The notes beneath the pieces are model-generated. The model had not been told where the DNA came from. It was given only the letters and a program-made list of their open reading frames with translations, and did no database searches. Below are positions 9,201 through 57,702 of a DNA stretch of 64,000 nucleotides, piece by piece (position 1 is the stretch's first letter; each line of letters opens with the position of its first letter). The translations under genes were made by a program, and so were the position numbers. This stretch comes from Phyllobates terribilis (Eukaryota), in the NCBI RefSeq assembly GCF_046119375.1, contig NW_027362769.1, positions 374,790,001-374,854,000 on the forward strand, given 5' to 3'.

Positions 9201-12200
9201 CCCATAATAATAAGTACAGAGTCCCATAAGAACAACCACAGTGCCCCATAATAATTACAGTGCCCCATAATAACATCCACAGTGCCCCATAATAATAAGT
9301 ACAATGGCCCATAATAACAGCCACAGTGCCCCATAATAAGTACAATGCCCCATAATAACAGCCACAGTGCCCCATAATAATAAGTACAATGCCCCATAAT
9401 AACAGCCACAGTACCCCATAATAAGTACAGAGTCCCATAATAACAACCACAGTGCCCCATAATAAGTACAATGCCCCATAATAACAGCCACAGTGCCCCA
9501 TAATAACAACCACAGTGCCCCATGATAACAGCTATGGAGCTCCTCTAATGACCGCTTAAGTGTCCCTATAATATCAACCCTCAAATAACGGCCATAGATC
9601 CCCACATAGTCCCAATAACAACAGCACCAGTACTCTAAAAATTACATCCAGAGACCACATAATAGCAACCACAGTACCCTAAAAATAACAGCCTCAGTGC
9701 CCTATGATAACAGTCCCTGTCCTAAAGCCACGGTACCCTAAGGGTATGTGCACACGTTGCATTTTTTATGCGTTTTTGTTACAGGAAAAAAAAACATCGT
9801 TTTCCAGTACCAGCAAAGTGAACGAGATTTCAGAATTTCTTACTGATGCTGCTTATTTTTTCCTTGCAAATTTGAATTAAATCTGCCGCATTTCAATTCT
9901 TTCAGAGTTTTTGCAGCATTTTTCATCTATTCAAATGAATGGGTGAAAAAACGTATCAAAGATGAGCGTATTTTATGCAGCGCTTTTCCTGTCAACACTT
10001 CCATATTTGCAGCAGTAATATCTAATGCACATACTGAACATGTGAACATACCCTAATAATACTAAGCAGGGTCCCCATAATAAGAGCTGATGACAGCCAC
10101 ATTGCCTTCACATGAGAACAGCGCCCTAGTAAAAAAACCACAACGCTACACTGCCCTCAATAACAGCCACAGTGATCTTATCTCAGAAGAGGACTATTGT
10201 AGCCCCCAGTAATTACTGAGTAAGTAAGTATAACCCTCATCATCTGCTTTGATCATCTAGAAATCACTTACGAGGAAGTTTCCACTGGAGGCCGGCGTGG
10301 TGAACAAATTAGAGAGAATTCTTCCCATTCTCAGGGGTAAGTGAGGCATTTACTCCACGCAGAAGACATCAGAGATGCAAGTGATCTGTGAAATTACATA
10401 GGACTGCAATAACGCTAACCTCACACGTAGCCATTTATTTTGTTTTTGGTCATTTTTGTTTGTTTTTCATTTGTGCCTTATTCTGCATTTAATTAGCTTT
10501 TTTTTAAGTTTATTTTATATGTACTATTCTGTTTTTTGTTCCTTTTTTATGTTCGTCATTGTGAAGAAAGTTTGGAGTTTTCAGATTTTTGCGGCCGTTT
10601 CATCATTGCAACGTTTTAAAAAGTCACTAAATTTTTATGAAAATGTCATCCAGCTTTCCTCGTTTATCTACATCTTAAATTTTTGGTGAAACATATGACA
10701 TTTTGGGTTATTAAAATCCCCAAACCGGTTAAAGACAAAAATAAAGCGCTTTCTTTCTTTATTTTTGTGCAAAATTCTTGAATCATGGACCATTTGGAAG
10801 AATTTGGTGCAAAAAAAAAAGCCCTTAACGAATAACACAAGAGAAAGTAAACAGAAAAGTGACTCTTCTTTTTTCCATTAGGTCTATGACATCACGTAAT
10901 TAAAAACTGACTAGCTAAATCTTTCTAAGTTCTATGTAAAAACAGAAGGTCATTTTTTCCTGTATGAGTCATAAGTCACTGCAAAAGTCCCAGGTCAGGG
11001 AGAGGAGGGAGCAGCTGGGTCAGGAGTTGAACAGATGATGATTGCAGAGACGAGAGACCTCCTGTTTCTACATAGAGCAGAGAAAAGAGAAGAATTAGCT
11101 GGGTAGAAAGGCAAAATGAGCAATTGTAAGTACACAGTGCTATATAATATGATGATTGCAATGTATTAAGAGGATAAAATCTTTGATGGGAGTGCTTCTT
11201 TAAAGAACTACAAGTCCTAGCATAATGGATAAATGGACAAATTGCATGGCCGGCGTCTGTCTCTAACAGCAGAAAGCGGAGCTGAGCTCTGTGCGCTGCT
11301 GTTAACCATTTATGTGATGCTGTCAATCTCTGACAGCAGCATTTAACTGGCGGAGTTGCCAGTACAATCGCATTGTCCCCCCTACATGGGACTCAATTGC
11401 AGAATATTAATGAGTTGAAGGCTACCGGGAACTAGATGTTCGCAAGTTCAAGGGTAGTAAAAAAAAAAACGAAAAAAAACCCCATAGTTTTAAAAATATA
11501 TATTAAAAAAAGTAAAAAATTTGAATCATTCCTCATTTTCCCTCATTAAAAAATGAATATATTTGAAATCACTGAGTCCGTAAACGTCCTGTACATCAAT
11601 ATATAAAATTAATGAATCCGTACGGAAAACTTCAAAAAGAGAAAAAAATGATCAAAACGCCAGAATTGCCCTAAACATCCTATGTACGACAAAATGGAAT
11701 CAAGGAAAACGTCAGTTCGCAATGCAAAAAACAAGCCCTCACACAGCTCAATAGACAGAAAAATAAAAACATTCCGGGGGTCTCAGAAAATGGCGACATG
11801 AACCAAAATTTATTTATCTGTATTTTTTTTTTTTTTAAACTTCAAATTTTTTTTTATTAAATAAAAAAAACAAACTATGCAAGTTTGGTATCACCGTAAT
11901 CGTACAGACCTGGAGAATCAGAGGAAAAATAAAAAATCCTTGTCGGGAAGGGGTTAAAGAACTCCTTTGCCTCTGAATAGATACCAAATGAATGAGTAAA
12001 GAACTTCATTTTCCTTTCAGGTTGAACAAGTTAGTGGAACAATGGGAGTCCTTCTTGTGATTTTACACGAAACTTGTATGACAATGAACGTTTTCTTCTA
12101 ACTATTATGAAAATCTTAGACTTTCATTTTACAAGGATCAGGAAATGTCACTGTTAAATATTTTATAGTATTTGTTTTATATGCAGAATTTACTTATAAG

Positions 12201-15200
12201 ATCCAATCTGCTGATAAAATCTTTGAACCAGACCTTACGATGCGGTTTATTGCTCACATTAGGAATATATAAACAGGGTCTGTCTGTTCATTCCGCAACT
12301 GATAAGCTAAAGTTGTGACATTTTATTGGAAGTGCTTTTATATAGAGTCACACCCTTCTATAGAAAAAAAAATAAGTTCTAGAACTTTTTAGAACAATCA
12401 AAACTAAAGCACTAAGTAAGTCATTACAGTAGAGGTTCCAAAATATTGGCCGGCTAGCACTTCGAGAACTGGCATAATAGCAGAACGTCGTAATATGGGA
12501 TCTAGAATCAACCAGGTTATGAAAATATTCTGTGTACTGTAATATTTGGTGGATCAGGGCGACACTACACTCTATAACTTAGAGTTACATAGTTACATAG
12601 TTACATAGTTTATAAGGCCGAAAAAAGACAAGCGTCCATCCAGTTCAGCCTATTTCTTGTGCACTGCTGCTATTCCGCAGCGTTGATCCAGGTTAAGGCA
12701 AAAAAAAACCATGCGGTATAGGCCAATTTACATCATTGAGGAAAAATTCATTTCCCGACACCAATCTGGCAGTCAGATTAAATCCCTGGATTAATTAACT
12801 AAGCATAAGATGTAATTTTATTGTTCTCAAGAAAGGCGTCCAGGCCTCTCTTGAACTCATTAAGTGAGTTGGACATCACCACTTCCTCTCCCAGAGAGTT
12901 TCAGAGTCTCACGGCTCTGACCGTAAAGAATCCCCTTCTATGCTGGTGCAGGAACCTCCTTTCCTCCAGACGCATAGTGTGCCCCCTCATCTTTGTCACC
13001 ATCCTTGGTATAAATAGGTCATGGGAGAGATCTCTGTACTGCCCCCTGATGTATTTATACATGTTTATGAGGTCTCCCCTAAGCCTTCTCTTTTCCAACG
13101 TAAATAGGCCTAATTTTGACAACCTCTCTGGGTATTCTAGTCCCTCCATTCCCTTTATTACCTTAGTCGCCCTCCTTTGTACCCTCTCTAGCTCCAATAT
13201 GTCTTTCCTGAGCACAGGAGCCCAGAACTGTGCACAATATTCTAAGTGCGGCCTTACCAGCGCTTTATACAGAGGAAGAACAATGTTCTCATCATATGCC
13301 CCTATTCCTCTTCTGATGCATGCCATGACTCTATTTGCCTTCGCAGCTGCTGCCTGACACTGGGCACTCCAATTTAATTTGCTATTAACCAAGACGCCCA
13401 GGTCCTTCTCCATGTCAGATTTCCCCAACGGTTTCCCATTTAATATGTATGGGTGACTGCTGTTTTTCTTTCCCATGTGCATGACCTTACATTTATCGGC
13501 ATTGAACCCCATTTGCCACTTTTTGGCCCAACTCCCCAATTTATCTAAATCCTCCTGTAGCTGTGACCTATCCACATCTGTATTAACTACTTTACAAAGT
13601 TTAGTATCATCTGCAAATATTGCTATTTTACTATGCAACCCTTCCACTAGATCATTAATAAATATATTAAATAATATAGGGCCCAAGACAGACCCTTGAG
13701 GCACCCCGCTAGTAACCCTGACACACCCTGAGCTTACTCCATTGATAACCACCCTCTGCTTTCTATCACTCAGCCAGCTATTTACCCACTTGCACACATT
13801 ATCCCCCAGACCAAGCATTCTCATTTTATATACCAACCTTTTGTGTGGCACGGTATCAAACGCTTTGGAGAAGTCAAGGTATACACCATCCACTGACTCT
13901 CCCCGGTCCAGCTGTGAGCTCACCTCCTCGTAGAAGGCCATCAGGTTTGTTTGGCAGGAGCGATCCCTCATGAATCCATGTTGATATGGAGTTAGACAGT
14001 TATTATCATTAAGATATTCTACAATAGCATCTCTAAGAAATCCTTCAAACAATTTACCCACAACAGACGTTAAGCTGACTGGTCTATAGTTCCCAGGGTC
14101 ACTTTTAGACCCCTTTTTGAATATTGGTACCACATTTGCTTGGCGCCAGTCTAGTGGGACAGTCCCTGTCCATAAAGAGTGCTTGAATATAAGATACAGC
14201 GGCCTGTCTATCACATTACTTAATTCTTTTAGTACCCGGGGGTGTATGCCATCTGGGCCTGGTGACTTGTCTATTTTGATATTATTTAGGCGTTTCTGTA
14301 CTTCCTCCTGGGTTAGGTGGGTGATATTTAGCGGAGGGTTTACTTTATCACTCTGCATTTCCTCCGATAAATTGTTTTCTTTTGTGAAAACAGTGGAGAA
14401 GAAGCTATTGAGTAGGTTTGCTTTACCCTCATCGCCCTCTATGATTTTACCCAGGTTATTTTTCAATGGGCCAACTCCATCAGTTTTAATCCTTTTACTG
14501 TTTATATAGTTAAAGAACAGTTTGGGATTCGTTTTACTTTCCTTGGCAATTAGTCTCTCTGTCTCCTCTTTTGCTATTCTTATTTGTTTCTTACAGATTT
14601 TGTTTTTTTCCCTATAAGATATTAGCGCTTCCTCGCTGCCTTCTTGTTTAAGTTTACCGAAAGCCCTTTTTTTGTTTTTCATTGCCCTCTTGACTTCCTT
14701 ATTTAGCCACATTGGCTTCCTCCTATTCCTAGCCCTTTTATTCCCGTAAGGTATGTACCTTCTACAGTGACTATGTAGGACTGTTTTGAAAATTTCCCAT
14801 TTTCTATCCGTGCTCCTATTACTAAAGATACTATCCCAGTCTATAAGGTGAAGGGCATCTCTTAGCTGTTCAAACTTTGCCCTCCTGAAGTTCAGTGTTT
14901 TGTGACTCCCTTGCTGGGCACCCTACTGAAGCACATGTGGAATTGTATAATGTTGTGGTCACTATTTCCCAGATGCCCCCCGACCTGCACCTCAGTTATT
15001 CTGTCTGGCCTGTTAGTTAATATTAAATCTAAAAGGGCCGTCCCTCTAGTTGGTTCCTGCACAAGTTGTGACAAATAATTGTCTTTGATAATTGACAGAA
15101 ACCTGTTTCCTTTCTGAGATCTACAGCTTTCGGTTTCCCAGTCTATATCGGGGTAGTTGAAGTCCCCATATCGGGGTAGTTGAAGTCCCCAACAATGTGC

Positions 15201-18200
15201 AACAATGAAACACTAATACTTCGAATTGGTCAGTACTGGCATTCAAGTACATAGGGTTGGTCACAATTATAGTTGGAATCGGTCAACAATTGACCATACA
15301 ATTGGCATACTATTATATGGAACTGGTAAGCTCTGGCGTACTATATATTTGAGGCTGGTCAGAATTAGCACTATAATACTTGGGATGGTCAACATTGACA
15401 TTTTAACACTTGACATTGGTTAACATTAGCACACTAATACTTGGAATTGGTCAACATTTGCATGCTAATACTTCAGGTTGGTCAACATTGGACCAATACT
15501 TGGGGATGGTCAACAATGGCACTTCAATACTTGAGGTTGGTCAACATTGGACCAATACTTGGGGATGGTCAACAATGGCACTTCAATACTTGAGGTTGGT
15601 CAACATTGGACCAATACTTGGGGATGGTCAACATTGAAACTTCAATACTTGAGATTTATCAACATTGACAACCTAATACTTGGGATTGGTCAGCAATTGC
15701 ATGCTAATACTTGAGGTTGGTCAACATTGGAACAAAACTTGGGGATGATCAACATTGGCAATTCAGTACTTGATATTGGTCAATATTTACACACTGATAC
15801 TTGAAATTAGTTAACACTGACACCGCAACCTTTGTGATTGGTCAAGCATAACACTTCATTACTTGGGAATGGTAAACAATTGATTTCCAATACTTGAGAT
15901 TGGTCAACATTGGCACTCCAATACTTGGGGATAGCCCACATTGGTAGTCCAATAATTTAGTATGGTAAACATTGGCACACTAACACTTGAAATTAGTCAT
16001 CATTGGCTTACTAATACATGGAAATGGTCAACATTGTTACTCCAGTACATTAATACTTGAAACTGGTCAACATTTACACACTAAATCTTGGAACTGGCCA
16101 ACAATGACATTCCTATTCTTGTGTTGGTCAATATTGGAACACCAATTCTTGAGGTTGGTCAGTATCAGCACACTAATACTTGGTGTTGGTCAACACTAGC
16201 ATATTACCGTAATACTTGAAACTGGTCAACATTGGCACTGTATTACTTGAGATTGGTTGACATTAGCACACTATTACTTGAAAATAGTCAACAGTAGCAC
16301 ACTTGCTTTTAAGGCCTTAGTTAGATAATGTCTTCGGCCTCTACAAGTCCTATCTCTTTAAAAGTATTATGAAAGTATTGAGTTGTATCTATGACAGAGT
16401 GAATCATGAATTGCAACCTTGGTGTGACTTACAACTATTATGATTCAAGTTACCACCTTACTCATGCCAGTCATTGTGTTGCGTAATAATTATTTTTTTG
16501 CTTTTATAGATGCCCCATTGCTGTTCCGCAGTAAATTTTCTAATCGATACTTAGAGAGGCTCCGACTTTTAGAAATTTATTCCAAGGAACTTCTTCAAAC
16601 TGACTCCAAGATCTCTCAGTGTGAAGAGGTTATTGATTTTTTTACTCCTAAGAAGCAGGACCTCACTCCGTCCTTTCCTGAAAACAGGTTTGTATAGTAG
16701 ACGTCCTATCTAGAGATCATGAATGGACAGACGTATCACCGTCACCACGAGTCATGTTAACATCCTTGAATGTTCATCTTTGGTTTTTCTGAGCATGAAA
16801 AGTACCTAAATCGTCATTATCTCCTTATTTCAGTGTTGTAATAATGCCATCAGACAATGATCAAAAAGAGGTAACATATCCACCCAGGTCAACACAACTC
16901 ACCACCACACAGCCAATTATATCTGAATCCTACATCTGCCTTGATAACTTTGAAACCAAAGATACCAAGAACAGACCATTTAAGGTCAAGAAGAATCAAT
17001 GCATTGATGTCCTGATAAGAGATCCTTCTGGTAGGTCCTAGATTTCACATGTGACAAGAAAAGAGTCACCACCAAGTGAATCTAAAAGTTAGGCATCTAT
17101 TCCTTTCTTCTAGGCTGGTGGTTGGTGGAGAATGAAGAGAAACAAGTATCCTGGTTCCCGGCTCCTTATCTGAAAAAGTCAGAGTCTTTAGAAGATATTA
17201 ACTCAAAGAGGAAATCATTCAGGAAAGGTTGGTGAAGTGGACAACTTTCATAGCTCCAACTGAGGCAATTATTCAGAAAAATCATAGAGGCATAAGAGGA
17301 TTACACAGGTGGGGGCTTGTGACCATTGTTTCCTCTAAAGGCCTCTATAAACATTAGACTACTGTCGTCTAAACCCGTTGATATCTCATTGACAGATGAT
17401 GTAGTTGGAGAGAATGATCTGGGCTGACGGCAGCGACTCTCTCATAGATAACACAGGAGGACTCAGCCGAGCCGAACGTTTCTGTGTATGGGGGAATTGG
17501 GAGAGATAGCAGTCCGCTGAACGATTAGTCCGACATCATTTGCCCAAAAGTTATTTATTATGCATGGGGGGGTTTGTGTATTTGTGGCTTAGGTTAAGGC
17601 ACTCGGACTACCGATCACATTGTTCTTCTGGAGATAAGCTGCCGGCCCATGTGTCTGCTGGCGGCTTTCTCATAGAGGACACGGGTACGCTCAACCAAGC
17701 GCTCCTGTGTATGGGAGTGTGAACAGATATGGCTGTCAGAGGAATGATCGGCCAAAGCATCGTTCAGCCGACAGCCATCTAATGTGTATGGCTGGCCTCT
17801 GGGACAGGAGCTCTGATATCTCCAAGCCAGGTTATACAAAAATTCTAGAAATATTAGCCTAAATTGCTCTTACAATTTTTCTTACAGCAGCCAGATACTC
17901 CAGAGCATCTTGATCTAAGAGAGTGACAGTTATTGATGGCGATTCATCAAAGCTTTTTCACCAGATTTTTGGCGAAAAAAAGCTTTGAAAAGTCGCATTA
18001 TTTTGTGCAATTGCGAGTTTGCACAAAAAAAGTGATTTGGCGTGTTAAGGTCATTCATGCCGTCAAATTCATGATGAGCGGCGGTGTTTGCTAGGCCACA
18101 GATCTTACTCCAGCTACGCACCCCACCTGATTCATTAAGAGGCGTGCGCTTCTTAATGAATCAGGAGCATCTGCTCCAAAACGCCCCCTCATCAAGACCG

Positions 18201-20383
18201 ACTAGAGAATCGCTGGATTGAATGAATCGCCCCCATGGTCTATATCTCAAGTGGTTTAAATCAATAAGGGGAATTTCATCTGCATCCCTGCTGGTCTAGG
18301 GCAGTGAATATGTTAATTTCTGCATTCAATGTGATCTAAAGCGGTAAAAAGGTTATTTTCTCACTCCTGGTGGTCTAGGGTAGTAAAAAGGTTTGCCTCA
18401 GCAGTGAAGAGATTTATGTCAGCATCCCTGGTGGTCTAGGGCAGTGTACTCTTTGGGTTAGTTTCAGCATCCATGGTGGTCTAGGACAGTGTATTCTTAC
18501 GGTCAGTTTCAGCATCGCTGGTGGTCTAGGATAGTGTACTCTTAGGGTTAGTTTCAGCATCCCTGGTGGTCTAGGACAGTGTACTCTTAGGGTTAGTTTC
18601 AGCATCCCTGGTGGTCTAGGATAGTGTACTCTTTGGGTTAGATTCAGCATGCATGGTGGCCTAAGAAAGTGAATCCTGCTTTGAGCAGGGGGTTGGACCA
18701 GATGACCCAGGAGGTCCCTTCCAACTCTACCATTCTATGATTCTATGATTCTAAGAATGTGGAAGTACTAGTCTAAGTATCCCTGGTAGAATAGGTCAGT
18801 AAAGAGCTTAGTGCCTGGATCTCCTGTGGTCTAGGGCAGTATTCTGTATGAATTAAAGTCAACATCCCTGGTGGTCTAGGGCAGTTGGTCTAGGAATATG
18901 TAGAGGCTAGGGTTAGTATTCCTGGTGGTCTAGTATGCATAGGGGCCTGGTGGTCCAGGGTAGTGAAGAGGTTCATCTCAGTATCCTAGTGGGGGTTAAT
19001 GACTGTCTCTGGTCACCTAGGACAGGGAAAGGTTTGTTTTCAAGCTCTTGGGTTTCTTGAGTGAAGAAATTATTCTGTTCTATCTATATTTTTCTAACAA
19101 GTTTCATCCATCCTGCAGCCATGTTGATACATATCCTTTTTTTCAGTAATGCTGCTGATCAGATTTCATTTTTTTCAGGAACGTATTACTACGCAGAGAA
19201 GGGCTACAAAGCTCAGAAAACAGATGAAATGTCACTTACGGTTGGCGTTGTGGTAGAGGTCATTGAGAAATCTGAAATTGGATGGTGGCTTATTTGGTAA
19301 GAGGGTTATTATTTTTTCTCTTTACAGCCAATGATTATTTAAAAGGGTAGAGTATAGATGGTATTAGCCCCCCATTCAAGTAAATACCAGACACAACCTA
19401 TGGACTAGAGTGGAGAAAGTATCCATACTTTTCCAATCTCAAAACTTGGCAAACAAATAGATGCTAAAGCATTTGGCATGGGGCTAAATATGGGACTAGA
19501 ATCCAAGAAATATCCATTCTTCATCTAGAAAAATCCTCATGGTGGCATGGTAGGCATATCAAAGTTGCTGCTTCTTTAAATTTCTGTGGTTAGGGCTGGC
19601 GGAGAATCTGCAATATGGGTAGAAAAGCAGTGGTCAGGGTGGGCGGCAATCAAAAAGCATAGAAAAGAAGAAGCTATGTCGAACTAAGTAAATGGAGAAG
19701 AAGTCAGAATGTCTGGGCAGTCTGAATTTACATGATATACTGTACATTCATAATAGTTTCCTTCTTTCTTGGTTTCTTTCTCTTTTAGTTACAATGGAAG
19801 ATTTGGTTATGCCCCATCCATGTGCCTCAAGCCATATCAAAACCCGCACCAGAAACTACAAGTAAACCTACATAATAACCTATCAGGGTCTTCTCCCAAT
19901 CTCTCCAAGGTGGTGAGCAGTCTAGATACAGCCTCCAACCCACAACATAGGAATAATGAGGATGGGGGCCATAAGGGTAAACTAGAAAGGCTGCAATCAA
20001 TATCACTGAACGATCTCGAAGACTTATCAGACGCATCTGACCAGTCATTTGTCAAGTCAAGGAGAAAAAGAAATGTATATGTGGAATGGGAGGTGCAAGA
20101 CGACAAGGAAGGTGCATCTTCTTCCATGACTGAGAAGCCAAGATCCATCCAGACAGTGGTCTCCATTCATGAATGGAAGGATAATAAGGAGATGGGCGAC
20201 CATGTGGAGGAAAAACAACGAAAAGATTCAGGATTTGTGGAACATCTGTCACCAAAGACATCAATTTCTTCGGACGATGCTGACACCACAACCCCACCTG
20301 TGCCAGAAAGACCTACAATGCAGGAGATCCAGTCTAGATGTACCAACACAACCAAGAAAGCTGCTCTACAGGGGAGTGGATGA
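6250..20383 (+). CDS. NOXO1: NADPH oxidase organizer 1, tandem copy A (PX, SH3, SH3, long linker, proline-rich C-terminus), 472 aa
   Basis: Hand-built exons 6250-6309 ([20 protein letters not shown]), 7018-7098 ([20 protein letters not shown]), 10261-10336 ([17 protein letters not shown]), 16510-16687, 16834-17030 ([13 protein letters not shown]), 17114-17227 ([20 protein letters not shown]), 19179-19296, 19789-20383 ([18 protein letters not shown]). All introns GT-AG, phases compatible, total 1419 nt = 473 codons. [17 protein letters not shown] motifs and adjacency to TBL3 favour NOXO1 over NCF1. Confidence 0.92.
6604..6972. mobile_element. Degenerate Harbinger-type MITE in NOXO1-A intron 1
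   Basis: Ends GCCTCATTCAGAC ... ATCTGAATGGAGC with TAA/TTA flanks. Confidence 0.45.
7200..9720. repeat. About 2.5 kb A/C-rich minisatellite (~40-45 bp modules: ccccataataataagtacag(a/t)g / ccccataataacagccacagtg) in NOXO1-A intron 2
   Basis: Obvious tandem periodicity with degenerate edges; generates overlapping repetitive ORFs in all three minus-strand frames. Confidence 0.95.
9742..10053. mobile_element. PIF/Harbinger-type MITE
   Basis: TIRs GGGTATGTGCACA / TGTGAACATACCC; TAA target-site duplication on both sides. Confidence 0.8.
11250..11953. mobile_element. piggyBac-like non-autonomous element, partial
   Basis: Ends GAAGGGG|TTAA; shares CTGTCAATCTCTGACAG..CATTTAAC and downstream AT-rich blocks with the complete copy at 49906-51039. 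Confidence 0.65.
12585..15196 (-). mobile_element. CR1 LINE, 5'-truncated ORF2 (end of APE endonuclease plus complete RT) in NOXO1-A intron 3
   Basis: 603-aa ORF 14712-12901 with [28 protein letters not shown]; endonuclease motifs GDFNYPDI and LDLILTN..GNSDHN upstream; TGG>TGA stop near the C-terminus; (CTATGTAA)n tail at ~12585-12610. Confidence 0.95.
15200..16300. repeat. Degenerate ~28-31 bp minisatellite (ggtcaacattggcacttcaatacttgaggtt)
   Basis: Recurrent GGTCAACATT...AATACTTG units; clean 59-bp dimers at ~15480-15660. Confidence 0.85.
17936..18234. mobile_element. MITE with GGCGATTCAT termini and internal palindrome
   Basis: GGCGATTCATCAA at ~17938 versus TGAATGAATCGCC at ~18221-18233; internal hairpin TGATTCATTAAGA-GGCGTGCGCT-TCTTAATGAATCA at ~18130-18165. 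Confidence 0.55.
18285..19030. repeat. 39-bp minisatellite (catccctggtggtctagggcagtgtactcttagggttagtttcag), degenerate at the edges
   Basis: About 7 clean units at 18414-18660 and decayed units on either side. Confidence 0.85.
18671..18750 (+). mobile_element. Extremely 5'-truncated CR1 3' end
   Basis: GGGGTTGGAC..GATGACC..GAGGTCCCTTCCAAC followed by an (ATTCTATG)n tail, the classic CR1 terminus. Confidence 0.8.
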
Positions 20384-21674: not shown

Positions 21675-24257
21675 TCTACTATATAATTGTCTTATCCCGT
21701 CTGTCTGTCTATCTATCTGTCTGTCTGTCTGTCTGTCCTGGAAATCCCGCGTCGCTCATTGGTCCGGCAGCGGCCAATCAGCGCCGCGGGATTTCTGAAA
21801 AAAGATGGCGGCCGTTAGCGGCTCATCTGGCGGATGGAGGTCAGCGGCGATGCAGCGGGGAGATAAGCGGCGCTAGCAGCACAACTACCCCGACCGGCGC
21901 CGCTGACCTCCATGCGGCTAACGTCGGAAGATCAGCGGCTTGGCCCGCTGATCTCCCGACAGCAAGTGTGAACAGAGGACCGGGGAGCAGCGCCGCCGGT
22001 CGGGATGCTTCTGCTGCGAGCAGCCGCTCATCTCCCGGCTTCTCGCAGCAGAAGGAGCCGCACAAGCAGCGCCGCTCCCAGGCCCACACTAATACGACGC
22101 TGATTGGTCGCGGTGGCCGGCCGCGACCAATCAGCGAGATGGGCGGCAAATTTAAACGCCACTCTGCTGATTGGTCGCGGTGGCCGGCCGCGACCAATCA
22201 GCGAGATGGGCGGCAAATTTAAACGCCTCTGTGCTGATTGGTCGCGGTCGGCCACCGCGACCAGTCAGCGAGATGGGCGGCAAATTTAAACGCCGCTCTG
22301 CTGATTGGTCGCGGTGGCCGGCCGTGACCAATCAGCGAGATGGGCGGCAAATTTAAACGCCACTCTGCTGATTGGTCGCGGTGGCCGGCCGCGACCAATC
22401 AGCGAGATGGGCGGCAAATTTAAACGCCTCTGTGCTGATTGGTCGCGGTCGGCCACCGCGACCAATCAGCGAGATGGGCGGCAAATTTAAACGCCGCTCT
22501 GTTAATTGGTCGCGGTGGCCGGCCGCGACCAATCAGCGAGATGGACGGCAAATTTAAACGCCGCTCTGCTAATTGGTCGCGGTGGCCAGCCATGACCAGT
22601 GAGATGTCCGGCTAATTTAAACGCCGCTCTGCTGATTAATCGCGGCCGGCCACCGCAACCAATCAGCGAGATGGGCGGCAAATTTAAACGCCGCTCTGCT
22701 GATTGGTCGCAGCCGGCCACCGCGACCAATCAGCGATATCGGCGGCAAATTTAAACGCCGCTCTGCTGATTGGTTGCGGTCGCCGGCCACGACCAATCAG
22801 CGATATAGGCTGCAAATTTAAACGCCGCTCTGCTGATTGGTCGCGGTGGCCGGCCGCGACCAATCAGCGAGATGGGCGGCAAATCTAAACGCCGCTCTGC
22901 TGATTGGTCACGGTGGCCGGCCGCGACCAATCAGCGATATAGGCTGCAAATTTAAACGCCGCTCTGCTGATTGGTCGCGGTGGCCGACCGCGACCAATCA
23001 GCGAGATTGGCGCTAAATTTAAACACCGCTCTGCTGATTGGTCGCGGTCGACCAGCGGCGACCAATCAGCGATATAGGCTGCAAATTTAAACGCCGCTCT
23101 GCTGATTGGTCGCGGTGGCCGACCGTGACCAATCAGCGAGATTGGCGCTAAATTTAAACACCGCTCTGCTGATTGGTCGCGGTCAGCCGGCGGCGACCAA
23201 TCAGTGATATAGGCTGCAAATTTAAACGCCGCTCTGCTGATTGGTCGCGGTCAGCCGGCGGCGACCAATCAGTGATATAGGCTGCAAATTTAAACGCCGC
23301 TCTGCTGATTGGTCGCGGTGGCCGACCGTGACCAATCAGCGAGATTGGCGCTAAATTTAAACACCGCTCTGCTGATTGGTCGCGGTCAGCCGGCGGCGAC
23401 CAATCAGTGATATAGGCTGCAAATTTAAACGCCGCTCTGCTGATTGGTCGCGGTCAGCCGGCGGCGACCAATCAGTGATATAGGCTGCAAATTTAAACGC
23501 CGCTCTGCTGATTGGTCGCGGTCGGCCACCGCGACCAATCAGTGAGATTGGCGCTAAATTTAAACAGCGCTCTGCCGATTGGTCGCGGCCGCCGGCCAAC
23601 CACGACCAATCAGCGAGATGGGCGGCAAATCTAAACGCCGCTCTGCTGATTGGTCACGGTGGCCGGCCGTGACCAATCAGCGATATAGGCTGCAAATTTA
23701 AACGCCGCTCTGCTGATTGGTCGCGGTGGCCGACCGTGACCAATCAGTTAGATTGGCGCTAAATTTAAACAGCGCTCTGCTGATTGGTCGTGGCCGCCGG
23801 CCAACCACGACCAATCAGCGAGATTGGCGCCAAACTTAAACAACGCTCTGCTGATTGGTCGCGGCCGCCGGCGACCGCTACCAATCAGCGATTTTGGCGC
23901 CAAATTTAAAAACCGCTCTGCTCATTGGTCCTGACCGCCGGCCGGCCGAGACCAATCAGCGAGATTGCCGCCAAATTTAAACAACGCTCTGCTGATTGGT
24001 CGATTTTATCGCCAAATTTAAACAAGCTCTCCGGTCCTCACTAACACAGTTCGCTGATTGGTCACGGCCGCCACCCGTGACCAATCACCGATATTGCCGC
24101 CAAATTTAAACACCGTTTTGCTGATTGGTCGCGGTTGCCGGCCGCGACCAATCAGCGATTTTGGAGCCAAATTTAAACAACGTTCTGCTGATTGCGCCCG
24201 GTCGGCCGCATACATATTCTAGAATACCCGATGCGTTAGAATCGGGCCACCATCTAG
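21675..24257 (+). mobile_element. Non-autonomous Helitron, family 1 copy 1, with internal 67-bp palindromic minisatellite
   Basis: Inserted at A|T with no TSD; 5' TCTACTATATAATTGTC; (TCTG)n; 3' hairpin CCCGATGCGTTAGAATCGGG then CCACCATCTAG. Confidence 0.85.
22095..24205. repeat. About 30 x 67-bp unit, each an inverted repeat GCTGATTGGTCGCGG-loop-CCGCGACCAATCAGC plus AAATTTAAAC spacer
   Basis: 67-bp period is visible in the offsets of repeated ORFs (22104/22171, 22305/22372). Confidence 0.95.
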
Positions 24258-25816
24258 TTTTGCAATAAACATACTTGATGTGTTACGTATACAATTTTTT
24301 TATTATTATTTTTTATAAGCTATGCATAAGGGAAGCATGAACCAGCACTACAGTGCCCATTTAAAGGGAATCTAAGTTTTTGCTACCCTTTCTGAGAGCA
24401 GCATGATAAAGGGGCAAAGACCCCGATTCCAGTGCTGTGCCACTTACTAGACTGCTTGCTGCAGTTTTCTCTGCTGCAGATTTAGCAGAGTTTGGAATGC
24501 TGAGCCTTGTATAACCCCGCCCACATCACTGATTGGCTACTTTCTTTGTACACTGTGCATAGGCAGATGGCTGCAGATGGTGACAGTCACAGTGACAGTG
24601 GGGTTATACAGAGTAAATGATTATGGAGGGCTAAATGACAGCAGTTTTACTAGTCCTCTAGTGATAATCTCCTGCTGATAAAACTATGATTTTATCAAAA
24701 CTACAGCAGTACCATAACACCTCTCACTTACGTAATGTTTGCTGGGTTTCTCATTGAGGTTTCGCTGTATGTCTAGGGAAGCTCTATGTCTGCTTTGCCC
24801 TGGATCCATGGATTACAACATGGTGACATGTCTTGAAGAACATACTGTATGTAAGGAGGATTCCCTCCAGCCTCTTCTCTCATTGTTATTATAATGCAAT
24901 CTTACAACTTTCAAATCCATGTTATGGAATGAGGAAACAATACATAATTGTATTCATTGTGATTTTCCCGTGGGCTGGTGGAGTTGGTTTTTCAAGGACA
25001 ACCTCATCATACCACGGGAAGTTTCTACCGCTTCTTAAGATATATTCACATGACATCTTTTCGACAAAACCGACAACTTTTCGAAAGCGGAAGAAGCTTC
25101 ATGAAAATGCCTGTCACCTTTTTCCTGAAGCATCTTCATTGGTTTTTCTGCCATCCTCTTTGTGGTGGCTCCGACGCCGAGAGCTTTTTTTGCCATTTAA
25201 ATTTTAAAAGCCACCCAAAAAATGAACCTCTTTTAACAACTTCCCAGCTTTGGAAGCCTGAAGAGGTTAAAAGAAATGACAAAGACGGCACATGTGCACA
25301 GTGAGTCGTTATTACATTACTTTGCATTATTTCATTTTTTTTTTGGAGCGCTTTTTCGGGGGGCAGAATCCCCCTGAAAAAGACATTGTGTGCACTTTTT
25401 ATTTTTCGTAACAAATTGGACATTTTTTATCATCTTACCACATTTAGTATTTGGAGAGTTTTTATTATTTAGGGCGTGATAGAAAGTAAATAGACAATTC
25501 ATTTTTTAAATTTAAGCAATTTTTTTTATTCACATAGAGAAACTATTAAATATTTCTGCTTGAGTCTAACGTTTATTCTGAAATATAAAATGATCTGGAT
25601 AGTTAAACGGGGTCAGAACTGGGACTTTGGGCTCAACAGCGGCATAAATCTTTTTTTTTCTTCTTTTTGTTAATTTCTATATTTTGCTAAATATTATTTT
25701 TTTTTATTTTACATTAGGGAATATTTTTTTTACATTTTCCACTATATATTTCTAATATGCATGGAGCCGATATAGCAGCCCCACTTGTATGGGAAACTAG
25801 CCTTGTTGATGTCTTA

Positions 25817-31211: not shown

Positions 31212-33774
31212 TGGCCGGGCGTCATCCGTTGGAAGTCAAAGCTGTCGGCGTTCTTCGGAATGGGAAGCGGAAGGTAGCGTATTGCAACCATTTGTTCTTC
31301 TCGTAGCTGTACAGTCTATAGCAACGTCAACAGAAACAGCGCCACCCTTGTCTACAGGTTGAGTCTAGTATTGCAGTTCAGCTCTATTAAAGTGAATGGT
31401 GCTGAGATGTAATACCACACATAACCTGTTGGGGTGCTGTTTTTGAAAGAACACAGCCATGTTTTTAATAATCTTGAGCCTGTTTGCACTCCGTTGCACT
31501 CACCTGCCTCAATAATTATGTCTTGAAAATTCACTAAGGCTACTTTTTAAACGAGTACTCTCTTTTGTCTGCTTACTAGAAGGGTCCTTCAATGATCTCC
31601 TATTGGGACCCCAAGAATTCAGTTTTAATCTATTTTAAATCTTAATTTTCCTTCAGCGCCACCATAGGGGAAATTAGGCATTACACAATATCTATTCAAA
31701 TCTATTGGTTGTCTGTGTAATGTAGCACAGGACAGGTCCTCCAGAGCGAGAGATAGTCTTTACACTGCTCACCGCTTTGACCATGAGATCATGAACAATG
31801 GACTCCCATATATGAAATCAATAGGGCGTATGAAAATGGGTTTCCAAACTAAACAACCCCTTTAAATATGGTGGTTCTGTGAACAGAAACAGAGTATAAA
31901 CCATGATGATAGCCTCCTTGAACCTTGAGGTTGCCATATGCCTACAGGATGCATGGCTCTAACCACAGGACCCCACACATTTTGGATGAAAGTTGGTTGA
32001 ACCTAACGATTTTGGCAGGACCGAGCAATCATCTGTTGTGTATGGGGTCCTTCCTACTCTCCTCCAACAGATGATACCAGGAGAGATAAGAATCATGGAG
32101 TTTTCAGGGGAGAAGTCTGACAGCATCTTTCTTCCCTCTGCCCGTTCAAAAACATCAAATCGATCTTATTAAAGGGGATCGGAGGACTTTTGGGGTCCTG
32201 CCGTTTCTGAGCCTTAATGCAAAATCTATAACAAGACCCCACATGCCATGTTGTGGCCCATGTGCGGTGCACCCCCTAAAGTTACACCCCTAGTAACAAT
32301 GACAAACACGCATAGCCTGCTATGTATAGATCTTGCTTCTTCTTCCAGGCCATGCTTGGACTTCTAGTCCATCAATAATAAAAAAAAATATCTATAAAAA
32401 AAAAGTGAATTTTATGTAATTATTTTTTTCATTTTGACAGAGCAATATCTTTTCAATTCTGTGGTCTGACCACAACGACATAGTCGTCTACCGGACGTTT
32501 GAAGACTTCAAAAAGATGCACGTAAGTAACATTTTTCCCAAAAAGGACGTTGCTCGTTGCGTTGTAGCCCATGGAGCCATGGTTTACATAGAAACCAATG
32601 ACGCTTTTGCTTAATGAGTATCTAATAGCGTTTAGGCGAGGCCTGGTCACGTGAGAGGCCACGTAATTGCACTACAGTTGCCACGTTTTAGTATCCGACA
32701 TGTATCATGTGACCAGTGTCCAATTTTAGCCATGTGTTTAATTTATGACATTTTTTTGATAAAAGGGTTGTTTGCGACACCGGCCATAGCAATCAAAATG
32801 AAAGCTGGACTCTGATTGGTTGCATTAGGCAACAATGGCAAAATTAATTGAGACTTCAAAACTCAGGCAAGGGACAAGTATATCATTTGTCCACAGCAAC
32901 CAGCATTACCCATAGCAACCAATCAGCTGTCAGCTTTTATCTTCCACAGGGCCTTTGAAGAATGAAAGATGTGACCTGATTGGTTGCTGTGGGAAACTGC
33001 TTTACTTTTCCCTGTTAGTAATTCTAATAAAGTCCCCTATGACCTCGTTAGTTTCTGTCTACGTGGAAGATTTTTAGTCTGTATTTCGGTGGCAAAATGT
33101 TTTGGATAGAGCATAAAAACATTTTTTAAGACTCTTATTTACACCCAATTTGACACGTCTAGAGGTGTCCTAAAAAGGGGTATGGCTGAGAGAGGTGATA
33201 AAATCTGCTGAATTTAACAAACTTTTGGATTAAAATCTGCACTATCTTGCGCCAGTCATAAGGAAAATCCCTTAACATGCATCACAAGATGCAGAAAATG
33301 TATTCGCCATTTTTATAAACTTGATTTAGAAAAAAGTGAAATAAATCTTTTTTTTTTCCTCTTCTTTATTCATAGCGAGAATTAAGAAAAAAATTCCCAT
33401 TGGAATCCGGGTTACTTCGAAAATCGGAGAATATGATCCCCAAACTGAGAGGTAACGAGACTAGTCATCAATATCCAAGATCGACTGGTCCCAATCATTT
33501 CTAGGGATCCCATAAAAACAATCAAATTTAGGGGGTTCATTATAATTCAGCGGTCGGCCCCCAAGCATAGAAGGGCCCAGTATTTATGTAGCCCTTTCCT
33601 GGACCCTTGGTGAAATCCAACACAGGCCCCACCTGGCTAAGCGCCCTTTAAAGGGTGCCTAGCCCATTATATATATATATATATATAAATCCTGGCTAGA
33701 ATTTTTCCACATTTAGGGTATGATTTAAAGAGAAAAAAAAAAGAAAATTCTATATAACCCACACACACACAGCG

Positions 33775-33839
<65 letters not shown>

Positions 33840-39800: not shown

Positions 39801-40174
39801 AATATGGATTTCAACAACCTCCTGTGAGAACATCACCGATGGGAAAAATCGGGGTGGAGACCCCAAGCTCGGAAACAGAAATGAAGCCTAAGGTTCGGAA
39901 GAACAGAAATCCACCTGCTGCTTCCGAGCAGCCAGCAATAGTCGTCCAAGAAGCCCCCATCCCCCGACCGAGGAAGATAAGTCAAGACGCACGGACTATG
40001 GGAAGTAATCCCAGCAGCCCTAAAGAAACTAGCGGCTCCCCCAACTCTCATCTTGTCTTTGACATTACCCCTCCGGTCCCTCAACGGCCCAAACATCATG
40101 AAATTCTTAACAATTGTACATTTGTAACGAGGACAGCTTTAAAGAAAAGGGAGGGCGTACTCCTGGACGGCTAA
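31211..40174 (+). CDS. NOXO1: NADPH oxidase organizer 1, tandem copy B, 482 aa (487 aa if the in-frame upstream ATG at 31196 is used)
   Basis: Exons 31211-31273 ([13 protein letters not shown]), 32441-32521, 33376-33451, 35057-35234, 36182-36381, 36469-36582, 37023-37140, 39556-40174. All GT-AG, total 1449 nt = 483 codons. Exons 2, 3, 4, 6, 7 are the same size as in copy A (81/76/178/114/118). [20 protein letters not shown]. Directly abuts TBL3 tail-to-tail. Confidence 0.94.
33780..33838. repeat. (TA)n microsatellite
   Basis: About 29 TA units, resuming after the Helitron at 34631. Confidence 0.95.
33839..34630 (-). mobile_element. Non-autonomous Helitron, family 1 copy 2 (short, 792 bp, array not expanded) in NOXO1-B intron 3
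   Basis: Reverse complements of the same termini as 21675-24257 (CTAGATGGTGGCCCGATTCTAACGCATCGGG ... ATTATATAGTAGA); inserted in a (TA)n tract. Confidence 0.85.
35771..36116. mobile_element. Kolobok/T2-type MITE in NOXO1-B intron 4
   Basis: Ends AGGAGACCTATCAC / GTGACAGATCCCCT|TTAA. Confidence 0.55.
37193..39380 (-). mobile_element. Full-span Tc1 transposon with frameshifted transposase in NOXO1-B intron 7
   Basis: TA TSDs; TIRs CACTGCTCAAAAAAATAAAGGGAACA; remnants [18 protein letters not shown] (HTH), [30 protein letters not shown]. Confidence 0.92.
37444..38150. repeat. 10 x 71/68-bp tandem array made from the Tc1 transposase 3' end
   Basis: Unit starts at 37444, 37515, 37586, 37654, 37725, 37796, 37864, 37935, 38006, 38077. 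Confidence 0.95.
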
Positions 40175-54606: not shown

Positions 54607-57600
54607 TCTACTATATAATTGTCTTATCCCGTCTGTTTGTCTGTCTGTCCAGGAAATCCCGCGTCGCTCATTGGTCCGGCAGCGGCCATTCAGCGCAGCG
54701 GGATTTCAGAAAAACGATGGCGGCCGTTAGCGGCTCATCTGCGGGACGGAGCTCAGCGGCGTTGCAACCGGGAGATGAGCACCGCGAGGCGCTCATCTCC
54801 AGTACCAGCAGAAGGACCCCGACCGCCGGACCCATCTGCGGGACGGAGATGCAGTCGGGAGATGAGCGGCGCGAGGCGCTCATGTCCCAGCCGGCAGCAG
54901 CGGAAGGACCGCCAGCGTCGCTGACATCCATGCGGAAGGGAGGACCGGGGTGCGGCGCTGTGGGTCGGGATACTTCTGCTGCGAGCGCCCGCTCATGTCC
55001 CGGGTTCTCGCAGCGGAAGTAGCCGCACAGGCAGCGCCGCTCCCCGGTCCTCACCAAGATGATTCGATGATTGGTCGCGGTCTTCGGACCCGACCAATCA
55101 CTGATCTTAGCGCAAAAGTTAAATACCGCTGTGCTGATTGGTAGCGGACGCTGCCCACGACCAATCACCGATTTGGGCGCCAAATTTAAATATTGGCCGC
55201 GACCAATCAGCACAGTAGTGGTTAACTTTAGCCGCAAGATCAGTGATTGGTCGCGGGCCAAGACCGCGACCAATCACCGATTTGTGCGGCACATTTAAAT
55301 AGCGGCCGCGACCAATTGGATGTCAGCGCCGCTCCCCGGTTCTCCCTTCACACCCTTGCCGCATGGATGTCAGCGGCGCTGCCTGTGCGGATACTTCCGC
55401 TGCGAGAACCGGACATTTGTGTTAAAAATCGCTGATTGGTCGCTGGCGCTGCCCGCGACCAATCACCGATTTGGGCGCCAAATTTAAATATCGCCGCGAC
55501 CAATCAGCACAGCGGTGTTTAAATCTGGAGCCAAGATCGGTGATTGGTCGCGTCCGATATTTAAATTTGCCGCCCAAATTGGTGATAGGTCGCGGGCAGC
55601 GCCAGCGACCAATCAGCGATTTTTAACACAAATGTCCGGACCTTAGTAACACCATGCGGATACTGTGGGGATATCAGCGGCTAGAGTGTGAAGGGAGGAC
55701 CGGGGAGCGGTGCTGCCTGTGCGGATACTTCCGCTGCGAGAACCAGGGACATGAGCGGGCGCTCGCAGCAGAAGTATCCCGACCCGCAGCGCCGCTCCCC
55801 GGTCCTCCCTTCACACCCTAGCCGCTGATGTCCCCACAGTATCAGCATGGTGTTACAAAGGTCCGGACATTTGTGTTAAAAATCGCTGATTGGTCGCTGG
55901 CGCTGCCCGCGACCAATCACCGATTTGGGCGCCAAATTTAAATATCGGCCGCGACCAATCACCGATCTTGGCTCCACATTTAAACACCGCTGTACTGATT
56001 GGTCGCGGACGCTATTTAAATGTGGCGCCAAAATCGGTGATTGGTCGCGCCCAGCGTCGGCGACCAATCAGCACAGCGGTGTTTAAATGTGGAGCCAAGA
56101 TCGGTGATTGGTCACGGCCGATATTTAAATTTGGCGCCCAAATCGGTGATTGGTCGCGGGCAGCACCCGCGACCAATCAGCGATTTTTAACACAAATGTC
56201 CGGACCTTTGTAACACCATGCGGATACTGTGGGGAGATCAGCGGCTAGGCTGTGAAGGGAAGACCGGGGAGCGGCGCTGCGGGTCGGGATACTTCTGCTG
56301 CGAGCAGTCGCTCATGTCCCGGGTTCTCGCAGCGGAAGTAGCCGCACAGGTGGCGGCGCTCCCAGGTCCTCACTAATACGATTCCGCTCCCCGCTCCTCA
56401 CCAATACGATTCGCTGATTGGTCGCGCTCTCCGCACGCGACCAATCAGTGATCTTGGCGCTAAAGTTAAACACCGCTCTGCTGATTGGTCGTGGCCGCTG
56501 CCCGCGACCAATCACCGATTTGGGCGCCACATTTAAATAGCGGCCGCGACCAATCACCGATCTTGCCGCCACATTTAAACACTGCTGTGCTAATTGGTCG
56601 CGGACACCAGCCGCGACCAATCAGCGAGCTTGGCGCCAAATTTAAACAACGCTCTGCTGATTGGTCGCGGACGCCAGATGCGTCCAATCAGCGAGATTGG
56701 CGCCAAATTTAAACAACGCTCTGCTGATTGCGGTCGCTGGCCGAGATCAATCAGCAGTATTGGCGCAAAATTTAAACAACGCTCTGCTGATTGGTCGCGG
56801 CCGTCAGCCGCGACTAATCAGCGATTTTGGCGCCAAATTTAAACACCGCTCTGCTGATTGTTCGCGGCCGGCGACCAATCAGCGATTTTGGCGCCAAATT
56901 TAAACCCCGCTCTGCATCGCTCTGCTGATTGGTCGCGGTCGCCGGCCGCGACCAATCAGCAGTATTGTCGCCAAATTTAAACACCTCTTTGCTGATTGGT
57001 CGCGGTCGCGACTAATCAGCGATTTTGGTGCCAAAATTAAACACGCTCTCCATTCCTCACTAACACGGTTCGCTGATTGGTCACGGCCGCCGCCCGCGAC
57101 CAATCAGCGATTTTGGCGCCAAATTTAAACACCGCTCTGCTGATTGGTCGCGGCCACCATCCGCGACCAATCAGCGAGATTGGCGCCAAATTTAAACAAC
57201 GCTCTGCTGATTGGTCGAGGCCAGCGACCGCGACCAATCAGCAGAGCGATGCAGAGCGGGGTTTAAATTTGGCCCCAAAATCGCTGATTAGTCGCGTCTG
57301 ACAGCCACGACCAATCAGCAGAGCGTTGTTTAAATTTTGCGCCAAAATCGCTGATTGGTCGCGGCCTCGACCAATCAGCGATTTTGGCGCCAAATTTAAA
57401 CACCGCTCTGCTGATTGGTCGCGGCTGTCAGACGCGACTAATCAGCGATTTTGGGGCCAAATTTAAACACGCTCTCCATTCCTCACTAACACGGTTCGCT
57501 GATTGGTCGCGGCCGCCGCCCGCGACCAATCAGCGATTTTGGCGCCAAATTTAAACACCGCTTTGCTGATTGGTCGCGGTTGCCTAACGCGACCAATCAG

Positions 57601-57702
57601 CGATTTGGGCGCCAAATTTAAACGCCGCTCTGCTAATTTCGCCCCTTCGGCCGCATACCTATTCTAGAATACCCAATGCGTTCAAATCGGGCCACCATCT
57701 AG
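54607..57702 (+). mobile_element. Non-autonomous Helitron, family 1 copy 3 (3096 bp) upstream of TBL3
   Basis: A|TCTACTATATAATTGTC ... CCCAATGCGTTCAAATCGGGCCACCATCTAG|T; internal CCAAT-palindrome array with rearranged and inverted blocks. Confidence 0.85.

What the first reader, a model, noticed from the sequence alone, without database searches (positions are those of the whole stretch)
21675..24257. Helitron that amplifies a palindromic double-CCAAT 67-bp unit
Seen: inside Helitron termini lie about 30 units, each a 15-bp-arm inverted repeat containing ATTGG and CCAATCAG in opposite orientations, separated by an AT-rich AAATTTAAAC spacer. That is roughly 60 NF-Y-consensus (RRCCAATCAG-like) sites in a CpG-dense 2.1 kb. 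The 5' end also has two CCAAT boxes and a perfect YY1 motif AAGATGGCGGC (~21803). Established: Helitrons often carry internal tandem arrays that seed satellites, and NF-Y binds CCAAT. Inference: a mobile NF-Y array or cruciform cassette placed between the two NOXO1 genes. Each hairpin could also stall or re-prime rolling-circle replication, which would explain the expansion.
Basis: partly seen in the sequence, partly recalled or inferred. Interest (0 to 1): 0.7.

Follow-up and report, generated by a model that had tools for sequence, protein, structure and literature searches.

The report
Helitron carrying a CCAAT-palindrome minisatellite
This is a non-coding copy of a rolling-circle transposon (Helitron) in a frog genome, filled with 30 tandem 67-bp units that each look like a small promoter piece; that is a known kind of element, and no regulatory activity is shown.

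Summary
Window 21675-24257 is a complete non-autonomous Helitron. It starts with TC after an A and ends with CTAG before a T. A 6-bp-stem hairpin lies 11 nt from the 3' end.

It carries 30 tandem units of about 67 bp. Each unit has a palindrome with 15-16-bp arms, and the arms are mirror-image CCAAT boxes. There are 53 exact RRCCAATCAG sites in the element. The whole window has 92, against 0.8 expected by chance.

Two more copies of the family lie in the same window: 33839-34630 (-) and 54607-57702 (+). This scan has already noted the family many times elsewhere in this genome.

The array grew by duplication of 3-unit blocks. Hairpin loops occur in both orientations, which points to inversions mediated by the arms. 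The two units at the 3' edge are shared in position with copy C.

Arm changes are almost never compensated (4 compensated, 63 disruptive). The CCAAT pentamer is about 3 times better kept than other non-CpG arm positions. So conservation follows the motif, not the stem.

Still untested: NF-Y binding, promoter activity, methylation state, and the idea that hairpins re-prime rolling-circle replication. Helitrons built largely of minisatellites are already described in frogs, fish, flies, bivalves and bats.

Verdict: a real feature, a new member of a known kind, of moderate to low interest.

The parts
21675..24257 (+). Helitron copy A, non-autonomous, 2583 bp
   Evidence: A|TC...CTAG|T termini. 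Termini align with copies B and C. There are only three 5' ends and three 3' ends in the window.
21675..21698 (+). Left terminal sequence, beginning TC and containing a TATATAA stretch
   Evidence: Nearly identical in the three copies. The 13-mer at the end has exact matches only at 21675, 34630 (-) and 54607.
21699..21737 (+). (GTCT)n microsatellite inside the left end; its length differs between copies
21741..21795 (+). Leader palindrome with 22-nt arms carrying ATTGG and CCAATCAG
   Evidence: Inverted repeat I3, 91% complementary. DNA fold -24.7 kcal/mol, z = -7.3. Local similarity to the array unit.
21802..21812 (+). AAGATGGCGGC, a YY1/TISU-type motif
   Evidence: Sequence. Exact in copy B and one mismatch in copy C. 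CAAGATGGCGGC is quoted as the TISU motif in PMC9658832.
21813..22098 (+). G+C-rich leader full of nested inverted repeats
   Evidence: 13 inverted-repeat pairs, with arms up to 50 nt.
22099..23990 (+). Main array, units A01-A28 of 63-71 bp
   Evidence: Three-unit higher-order repeats: A01-03 against A04-06, and A16-18 against A19-21.
23991..24052 (+). Truncated unit plus a copy of the leader-end segment, embedded in the array
   Evidence: Leader-end pattern found at 24027-24060. The same arrangement occurs in copy C at 57046 and 57472.
24053..24186 (+). Two edge units, A29 and A30, positionally shared with the last two units of copy C
   Evidence: Gapless 258-column alignment of the A and C tails, 88% identical.
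24187..24257 (+). Right terminal sequence: hairpin 24227-24246 (6-bp stem, 8-nt loop), then 11 nt ending in CTAG
   Evidence: The geometry matches the Helibat/Helraiser description in PMC4778049.
33839..34630 (-). Helitron copy B, 792 bp, inserted in a (TA)n run inside an intron of the second NOXO1 gene. The array is replaced by a segment of about 290 bp found nowhere else in the window.
54607..57702 (+). Helitron copy C, 3096 bp, with about 24 palindromes, extra leader segments in both orientations and inverted unit blocks

Best explanation
Copy A is a non-autonomous canonical Helitron. It inherited an internal minisatellite from its family.

Unit anatomy (shown). Each 67-bp unit has a palindrome whose two arms are mirror-image high-quality CCAAT boxes. 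It also has a variable G/C-rich box and an invariant AAATTTAAAC block. The palindrome resembles the one in the element's own promoter-like 5' leader, which pairs a double CCAAT with a YY1/TISU-type motif.

Array dynamics (shown from the sequence). The array changes locally by duplication of multi-unit blocks, through slippage or unequal exchange. It also changes by inversions whose breakpoints lie in the palindrome arms. The units at the array edge stay stable and are shared between copies.

Function (inferred). The unit is a multiplied piece of the family's own promoter or enhancer, likely bound by NF-Y. In non-coding copies like this one it is simply carried along. Any effect on NOXO1 or other host genes is unproven.
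For: - Helitron hallmarks are present in three copies. The hairpin lies 11 nt from the CTAG end, as in Helraiser.
- The array has 30 units.
- Three-unit blocks are duplicated with 1, 0, 1 and 0, 0, 0 mismatches.
- The loop TGGCCGG and its exact reverse complement CCGGCCA both occur, with forward spacers on both sides. Copy C has whole inverted unit blocks bounded by palindromes.
- The tail (leader-end fragment, two units and the right end) aligns without gaps between A and C at 88% identity.
- Among 37 distinct arm pairs there are 488 consensus pairs, 63 disrupted and only 4 compensated. The CCAAT pentamer is disrupted in 9 of 185 cells, against 30 of 222 for other non-CpG arm positions (Fisher p = 0.0036).
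- The leader and the unit share local similarity, scoring 26-31 against a shuffle mean of about 17, sd 2.1-2.6.
- There are 53 RRCCAATCAG sites in the element.
- TEs with multiple good CCAAT boxes are bound by NF-Y in mammals (PMC12065363, PMC3730095).
Against: - No binding, accessibility, methylation or transcript data were available.
- Units within an array are related by descent, so the Fisher test overstates independence.
- The leader-to-unit similarity is short (20-31 nt), and one shuffle scored higher.
- The AAATTTAAAC block is the best-conserved part of the unit, and NF-Y does not explain it.
- Only three copies could be compared.
- Copy B lacks the array, so the array may be dispensable for movement and says nothing about function.
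Confidence: 0.7

Rival explanations
1. Neutral minisatellite. The array is selfish or neutral tandem DNA that happens to contain CCAAT. Its conservation reflects only recent amplification, not any sequence-specific function.
For: Much of the array is very young: blocks are duplicated with 0-1 mismatches. Helitron minisatellites without an assigned function are common (PMC12001565). No functional data exist.
Against: The pentamer is about 3 times better kept than other non-CpG arm positions across two copies whose tails differ by 12%. Both arms and the AAATTTAAAC block are kept between copies A and C, while the loop and the G/C box drift. The same motif pair also sits in the single-copy leader of all three elements.
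Confidence: 0.22
2. The hairpin is the functional feature. The palindromes fold in the single-stranded Helitron intermediate. There they stall, terminate or re-prime replication. On this view that drives array expansion or helps transposition.
For: The predicted DNA hairpins are strong, -15.6 to -24.9 kcal/mol in the four units folded. Loop flip-flop and arm-bounded inversions show that the arms interact in vivo. Helitrons move through single-stranded or circular intermediates and use a 3' hairpin as a termination signal (PMC4778049).
Against: There are only 4 compensated changes against 63 disruptive ones in the stem. Growth is in 3-unit blocks and includes leader-end fragments, not single hairpin-delimited units. 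Copy B has normal ends and a classic A|T insertion without any array.
Confidence: 0.1
3. Co-opted host regulatory element. Copy A (or copy C near TBL3) now acts as a promoter, an enhancer or a CpG island for the neighbouring genes.
For: The composition is CpG-island-like: GC 0.58 and observed/expected 1.30 over 2.6 kb. The element lies 1.3 kb downstream of the first NOXO1 stop codon and about 8 kb upstream of the first detected exon of the second gene. Only 7 of 31 differences between the A and C tails are CpG transitions.
Against: There are no expression or chromatin data. The same composition is seen in all three copies whatever their position, including the antisense intronic copy B. High CpG is equally explained by youth and by descent from active master copies.
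Confidence: 0.08

Closest known systems
Helibat1 / Helraiser-type canonical Helitrons, and Heli1Xen1 of Xenopus
   Same: 5' TC and 3' CTAG ends, a TA-rich left end, a palindrome 11 nt upstream of the 3' end beginning CCCG and ending CGGG, and insertion between A and T (PMC4778049, PMC12001565).
   Different: This copy has no transposase gene, and its interior is a 67-bp array.
Minisatellite-filled Helitrons: Heli2Xen / Helitron-N2_XT (166-bp units), Helitron-N1_DR, and the DINE/HINE, bivalve and bat elements
   Same: Non-autonomous rolling-circle elements whose interior is mostly a tandem array. The array is also present in the coding partner (PMC12001565; PMC4067079 and PMC7492417, listed).
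   Different: The unit here is 67 bp and is a CCAAT palindrome plus a G/C box and a TTTAAA box. I found no description of such a unit. DINE/HINE and the oyster elements are Helentrons, which have different ends.
LTR12 and other mammalian TEs with multiple CCAAT boxes, including the R66 tandem repeat
   Same: Many optimal CCAAT boxes per element. Those families have more than 1 per 100 bp and this one has 2.6 per 100 bp. In mammals such families are bound by NF-Y and can act as promoters (PMC12065363, PMC3730095).
   Different: Those are retroviral LTRs with measured NF-Y occupancy. This is a DNA transposon with no binding data, and its boxes come in inverted pairs.
CCAAT plus CDE/CHR late cell-cycle promoters
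   Same: TTTAAA is a functional CHR, and a G/C-rich CDE sits 4 nt upstream of it (PMC4176359). In this element 16 units read G[GC]CG[GC]-N4-TTTAAA next to CCAAT boxes.
   Different: This is a motif resemblance only. No start site, DREAM/MuvB binding or cell-cycle regulation could be tested. The G/C box is the least conserved part of the unit.
Tandem monomer promoters of mouse L1 (from my own knowledge, not checked here)
   Same: A transposon 5' region built of tandem promoter units whose number varies between copies.
   Different: That is a retrotransposon with experimentally shown monomer promoter activity. It has no palindromes.

Membership tests
Canonical Helitron (non-autonomous) | 5' end begins with TC | tested here: met
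   TC at 21675-21676. The same holds at 34630 (-) and 54607.
Canonical Helitron (non-autonomous) | 3' end is CTRR | tested here: met
   CTAG at 24254-24257. The 18-nt end is identical in the three copies.
Canonical Helitron (non-autonomous) | Subterminal hairpin about 10-12 nt before the 3' end | tested here: met
   Stem 24227-24232 pairs with 24241-24246, with 11 nt to the end. C to T or A changes in copy C weaken the stem.
Canonical Helitron (non-autonomous) | Insertion between host A and T, with no target-site duplication and no terminal inverted repeats | tested here: met
   A|...|T in all three copies. Copy B sits in a (TA)n run. By inspection the ends are not complementary.
Canonical Helitron (non-autonomous) | A Rep/helicase-coding partner with the same ends | not testable with these tools
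   None is present in the window, and the rest of the genome cannot be searched. An earlier scan note (s1-234824) reports one, unchecked.
Helentron / DINE-HINE type | Insertion between T and T, with short subterminal inverted repeats | tested here: not met
   The ends are TC/CTAG and the insertions are between A and T.
NF-Y-bound regulatory transposon (LTR12-like) | Multiple CCAAT boxes with consensus flanks | tested here: met
   53 RRCCAATCAG sites in the element. The window holds 92, against 0.78 expected.
NF-Y-bound regulatory transposon (LTR12-like) | Measured NF-Y occupancy and promoter or enhancer activity | not testable with these tools
   No chromatin or reporter data.
CDE/CHR cell-cycle promoter | A CHR hexamer with a G/C-rich CDE 4 nt upstream, close to a start site and bound by DREAM/MuvB | tested here: inconclusive
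   The motif spacing is present in 16 units. Binding, start sites and regulation are not testable, and the G/C box is poorly conserved.
CpG island | Length over 200 bp, GC above 0.5, CpG observed/expected above 0.6 | tested here: met
   2583 bp, GC 0.578, observed/expected 1.30.
CpG island | Unmethylated in the germline | not testable with these tools
   Only indirect evidence is available: 7 of 31 differences between the A and C tails are CpG transitions.

The most novel reading that the evidence does not exclude
This abundant Helitron family spreads ready-made promoter or enhancer islands through the frog genome. The islands would be germline-unmethylated and bound by NF-Y, and perhaps by MuvB through the TTTAAA box. 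Copies such as A (next to NOXO1) and C (just upstream of TBL3) would then change host gene regulation. The number of units would tune the strength of the effect.
Probability: 0.12. Interest if true: 0.65.

Novelty: new member of a known kind. Interest (0 to 1): 0.3.

Why it matters
If the arrays bind NF-Y, one DNA transposon family would have seeded many dense CCAAT clusters across a large amphibian genome. That would be a non-retroviral counterpart of LTR12 in primates and a natural system for asking how unit number affects promoter strength.

The loop flip-flop and the arm-bounded inversions also give a clean sequence record of how palindromic tandem arrays rearrange.

As it stands, the copy is a well-formed example of an already described class, the Helitron filled with a minisatellite.

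Tried and rejected
So there is no copy number, polymorphism, expression or methylation evidence.
- Known RNA families. Nothing reaches a gathering score in the element or in the whole window. The only hits are weak generic microRNA-hairpin matches far below threshold.
- Outside copies. Exact-pattern scans with the 3' end and with the unit core found nothing in viral contigs or metagenome contigs.
- Empty site. The flanks of A, B and C have no paralogous unoccupied site in the window.
- Coding capacity. The ORFs of 61-118 aa in the array are repeat translations in several frames and on both strands, not genes.
- Hairpin selection. I looked for compensatory arm changes and found 4 against 63 disruptive ones.
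- Methylation-driven decay. CpG transitions are only modestly enriched among unit variants (10 of 46 variant types) and are few among copy-private changes. This does not separate youth from hypomethylation.
- Literature. I found no paper linking Helitrons with NF-Y arrays or describing Helitrons of poison frogs.
- Species. That the genome is a poison frog comes only from an earlier scan note. I did not test it.

Full report
**Observation.** The element begins with TC at 21675, after an A. It ends with CTAG at 24254-24257, before a T. Tandem Repeats Finder reports a 67-bp period at 22099-24002 (28.2 copies, 86% matches) and again at 24053-24194. Parsing against the unit consensus gives 30 units in the forward orientation. 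The element contains 29 CCAAT and 37 ATTGG, which is 2.6 per 100 bp. It has 53 exact RRCCAATCAG sites; the whole window has 92, against 0.78 expected from shuffles. GC is 0.58 and CpG observed/expected is 1.30, while the 2-kb flanks have 0.23 and 0.45. The leader palindrome with ATTGG and CCAAT (21741-21795) and AAGATGGCGGC (21802-21812) are present as described.

**It is a Helitron, and one of three in the window.** A BLAST of the element against the window found two more copies: B at 33839-34630 on the minus strand and C at 54607-57702 on the plus strand.
- All three begin with the same 13-mer starting TC.
- All three end with the same 18-mer ending CTAG.
- All three lie between a host A and a host T. 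Copy B sits inside a (TA)n run.
- These end sequences occur exactly three times each, always correctly paired.
- The 3' hairpin (stem 24227-24232 with 24241-24246) ends 11 nt before the terminus. That is the geometry described for Helibat/Helraiser, whose hairpin acts as a termination signal (PMC4778049). It is also close to Heli1Xen1 of Xenopus (PMC12001565).
- No transposase gene is present. The ORFs in the array are repeat translations.

**Unit anatomy.** The unit consists of:
- a left arm (GCTGATTGGTCGCGG);
- a 7-11-nt loop;
- the complementary right arm;
- a variable G/C-rich box;
- an almost invariant AAATTTAAAC block;
- a short linker.

Of the four units folded as single-stranded DNA, two fold with a 16-bp stem at -24.9 and -21.8 kcal/mol (z about -7). 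The other two have interrupted stems at -16.4 and -15.6 kcal/mol (z about -3). The units at the 3' edge of A and most units of C carry TTTTGGCGCC in place of GAGATGGGCGGC. I take that as the older form of the unit, an inference from its being shared between the two copies. The unit palindrome resembles the single-copy leader palindrome, with local alignment scores of 26-31 against a shuffle mean of about 17. The match is short, and one shuffle exceeded it.

**How the array changes.**
- The newest events are duplications of three-unit blocks. A01-03 against A04-06 differ by 1, 0 and 1 positions. A16-18 against A19-21 are identical.
- The asymmetric loop occurs as TGGCCGG in eight units, and with one or two changes in about ten more. 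In A09 and A10 it occurs as its exact reverse complement, CCGGCCA; A03, A06 and A22 carry that form with one change. The spacers on both sides remain forward. That is an inversion confined to the palindrome.
- In copy C, whole blocks of spacer-palindrome-spacer are inverted between two palindromes, for example 57243-57349. C also holds extra leader segments in both orientations.
- A fragment of the leader end is embedded near the 3' end of the array in A (24027-24060) and twice in C.
- The tail (that fragment, two units and the right end) aligns without a gap between A and C at 88% identity. So the array edge is inherited and stable, while the interior turns over.

This pattern is what slippage or unequal exchange, plus recombination or template switching between inverted arms, would produce. 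It does not call for hairpin re-priming of rolling-circle replication, although that cannot be excluded.

**Stem or motif?** Across 37 distinct arm pairs from A and C there are 488 consensus pairs, 63 disrupted pairs and only 4 compensated double changes. The CCAAT pentamer positions are disrupted in 9 of 185 cells, against 30 of 222 for other non-CpG arm positions (Fisher p = 0.0036). Conservation therefore follows the box rather than the helix. The caveat is that units are related by descent and only two arrays were available. The AAATTTAAAC block is at least as well conserved. It contains TTTAAA, a functional CHR variant, and in 16 units a G/C box lies 4 nt upstream, as a CDE would (PMC4176359). 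That is only a resemblance.

**CpG.** All three copies have CpG observed/expected of 1.04-1.30 in a window averaging 0.585. CpG transitions make up 10 of 46 variant types among the units of A. They make up 5 of 54 copy-private changes in the aligned left-end blocks and 7 of 31 differences between the A and C tails. That is much less than I would expect from long residence in methylated germline DNA; this expectation rests on my own knowledge. It fits either youth plus descent from active master copies, or protection from methylation. The data cannot separate the two.

**Context.** Paralogous exons on the plus strand define two genes, at about 7015-20380 and 32438-40171. Their exons carry PX and SH3 domains. 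The PX exon of the second gene matches PDB 2L73, NADPH oxidase organizer 1, at E = 3.3e-7. Copy A starts 1.29 kb after the first gene's stop codon (20381-20383). It lies about 8 kb before the first detected exon of the second gene. Copy B lies antisense in an intron of the second gene. I did not verify the TBL3 start next to copy C.

**Comparison with what is known.** Helitrons composed largely of minisatellites are documented in Xenopus (Heli2Xen/Helitron-N2_XT, 166-bp units, also flanking the coding copy), zebrafish, Drosophila, bivalves and bats (PMC12001565). Transposons carrying many optimal CCAAT boxes that NF-Y binds are documented in mammals: LTR12, MER and the R66 tandem repeat (PMC12065363, PMC3730095). 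I found no paper joining the two, and none on poison-frog Helitrons. Earlier notes of this scan describe the same family at many other places in this genome, including a copy with a broken transposase gene downstream of such an array. I used those notes as leads only.

**Limits.** Exact-pattern scans of viral and metagenome collections found nothing. Rfam found nothing. The rest of this genome could not be searched.

**Verdict.** The feature is real and accurately described. It is a non-autonomous Helitron with a family-inherited minisatellite of CCAAT palindromes. The Helitron call and the array description are secure. The NF-Y or promoter reading is plausible and modestly favoured by the conservation pattern, but untested. 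The re-priming mechanism is not supported. It is a new member of a known kind.

Noticed in passing
window 33839-34630 (-): Helitron copy B has kept both ends and the leader, but the array is replaced by a segment of about 290 bp (33930-34225) found nowhere else in the window. This may be captured or filler DNA. It sits in a (TA)n run inside an intron of the second NOXO1 gene.
   Followed up: partly
window 54607-57702 (+): Copy C is a rearranged element. It has additional leader segments in direct and inverted orientation (for example 54935-55299 with 56254-46646 direct and 55541-55812 inverted), a segmental duplication of about 426 bp (57019-57240 with 57445-57666, 90% identical), and two inverted units at 57253-57379. 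It has no internal Helitron ends.
   Followed up: partly
window 33685-33748 and 34706-34825: Short matching segments (79-88% identical, one in direct and one in inverted orientation) flank copy B and its TA/CA microsatellites. This suggests B landed inside another small repeat.
   Followed up: no
window 24378-24708 and 5261-5600: A different repeat of about 340 bp (74% identical, opposite orientations) lies about 120 bp downstream of copy A and in the first 6 kb of the window. It also carries an AGCCAATCAG site.
   Followed up: no
window 32800-33000: Three AACCAATCAG sites within 175 bp, in a GCAACCAATCAG / CTGATTGGTTGC arrangement, lie in the intron after the exon at 32438-32523. This looks like another interspersed repeat with CCAAT motifs, unrelated to the Helitron.
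   Followed up: no
window 7421-9532, 15301-16293, 37442-38151, 45117-46630, 48762-49183, 52647-53194: Six further tandem arrays, with periods of 44, 31/62, 71, 45, 81 and 50 bp. Several lie inside NOXO1 introns, so the locus is unusually rich in minisatellites.
   Followed up: no
window 21813-22098: The Helitron leader is a nest of long imperfect inverted repeats, with arms up to 50 nt and 78-95% complementarity. Parts of it are conserved among the three copies. Its role is unknown.
   Followed up: partly
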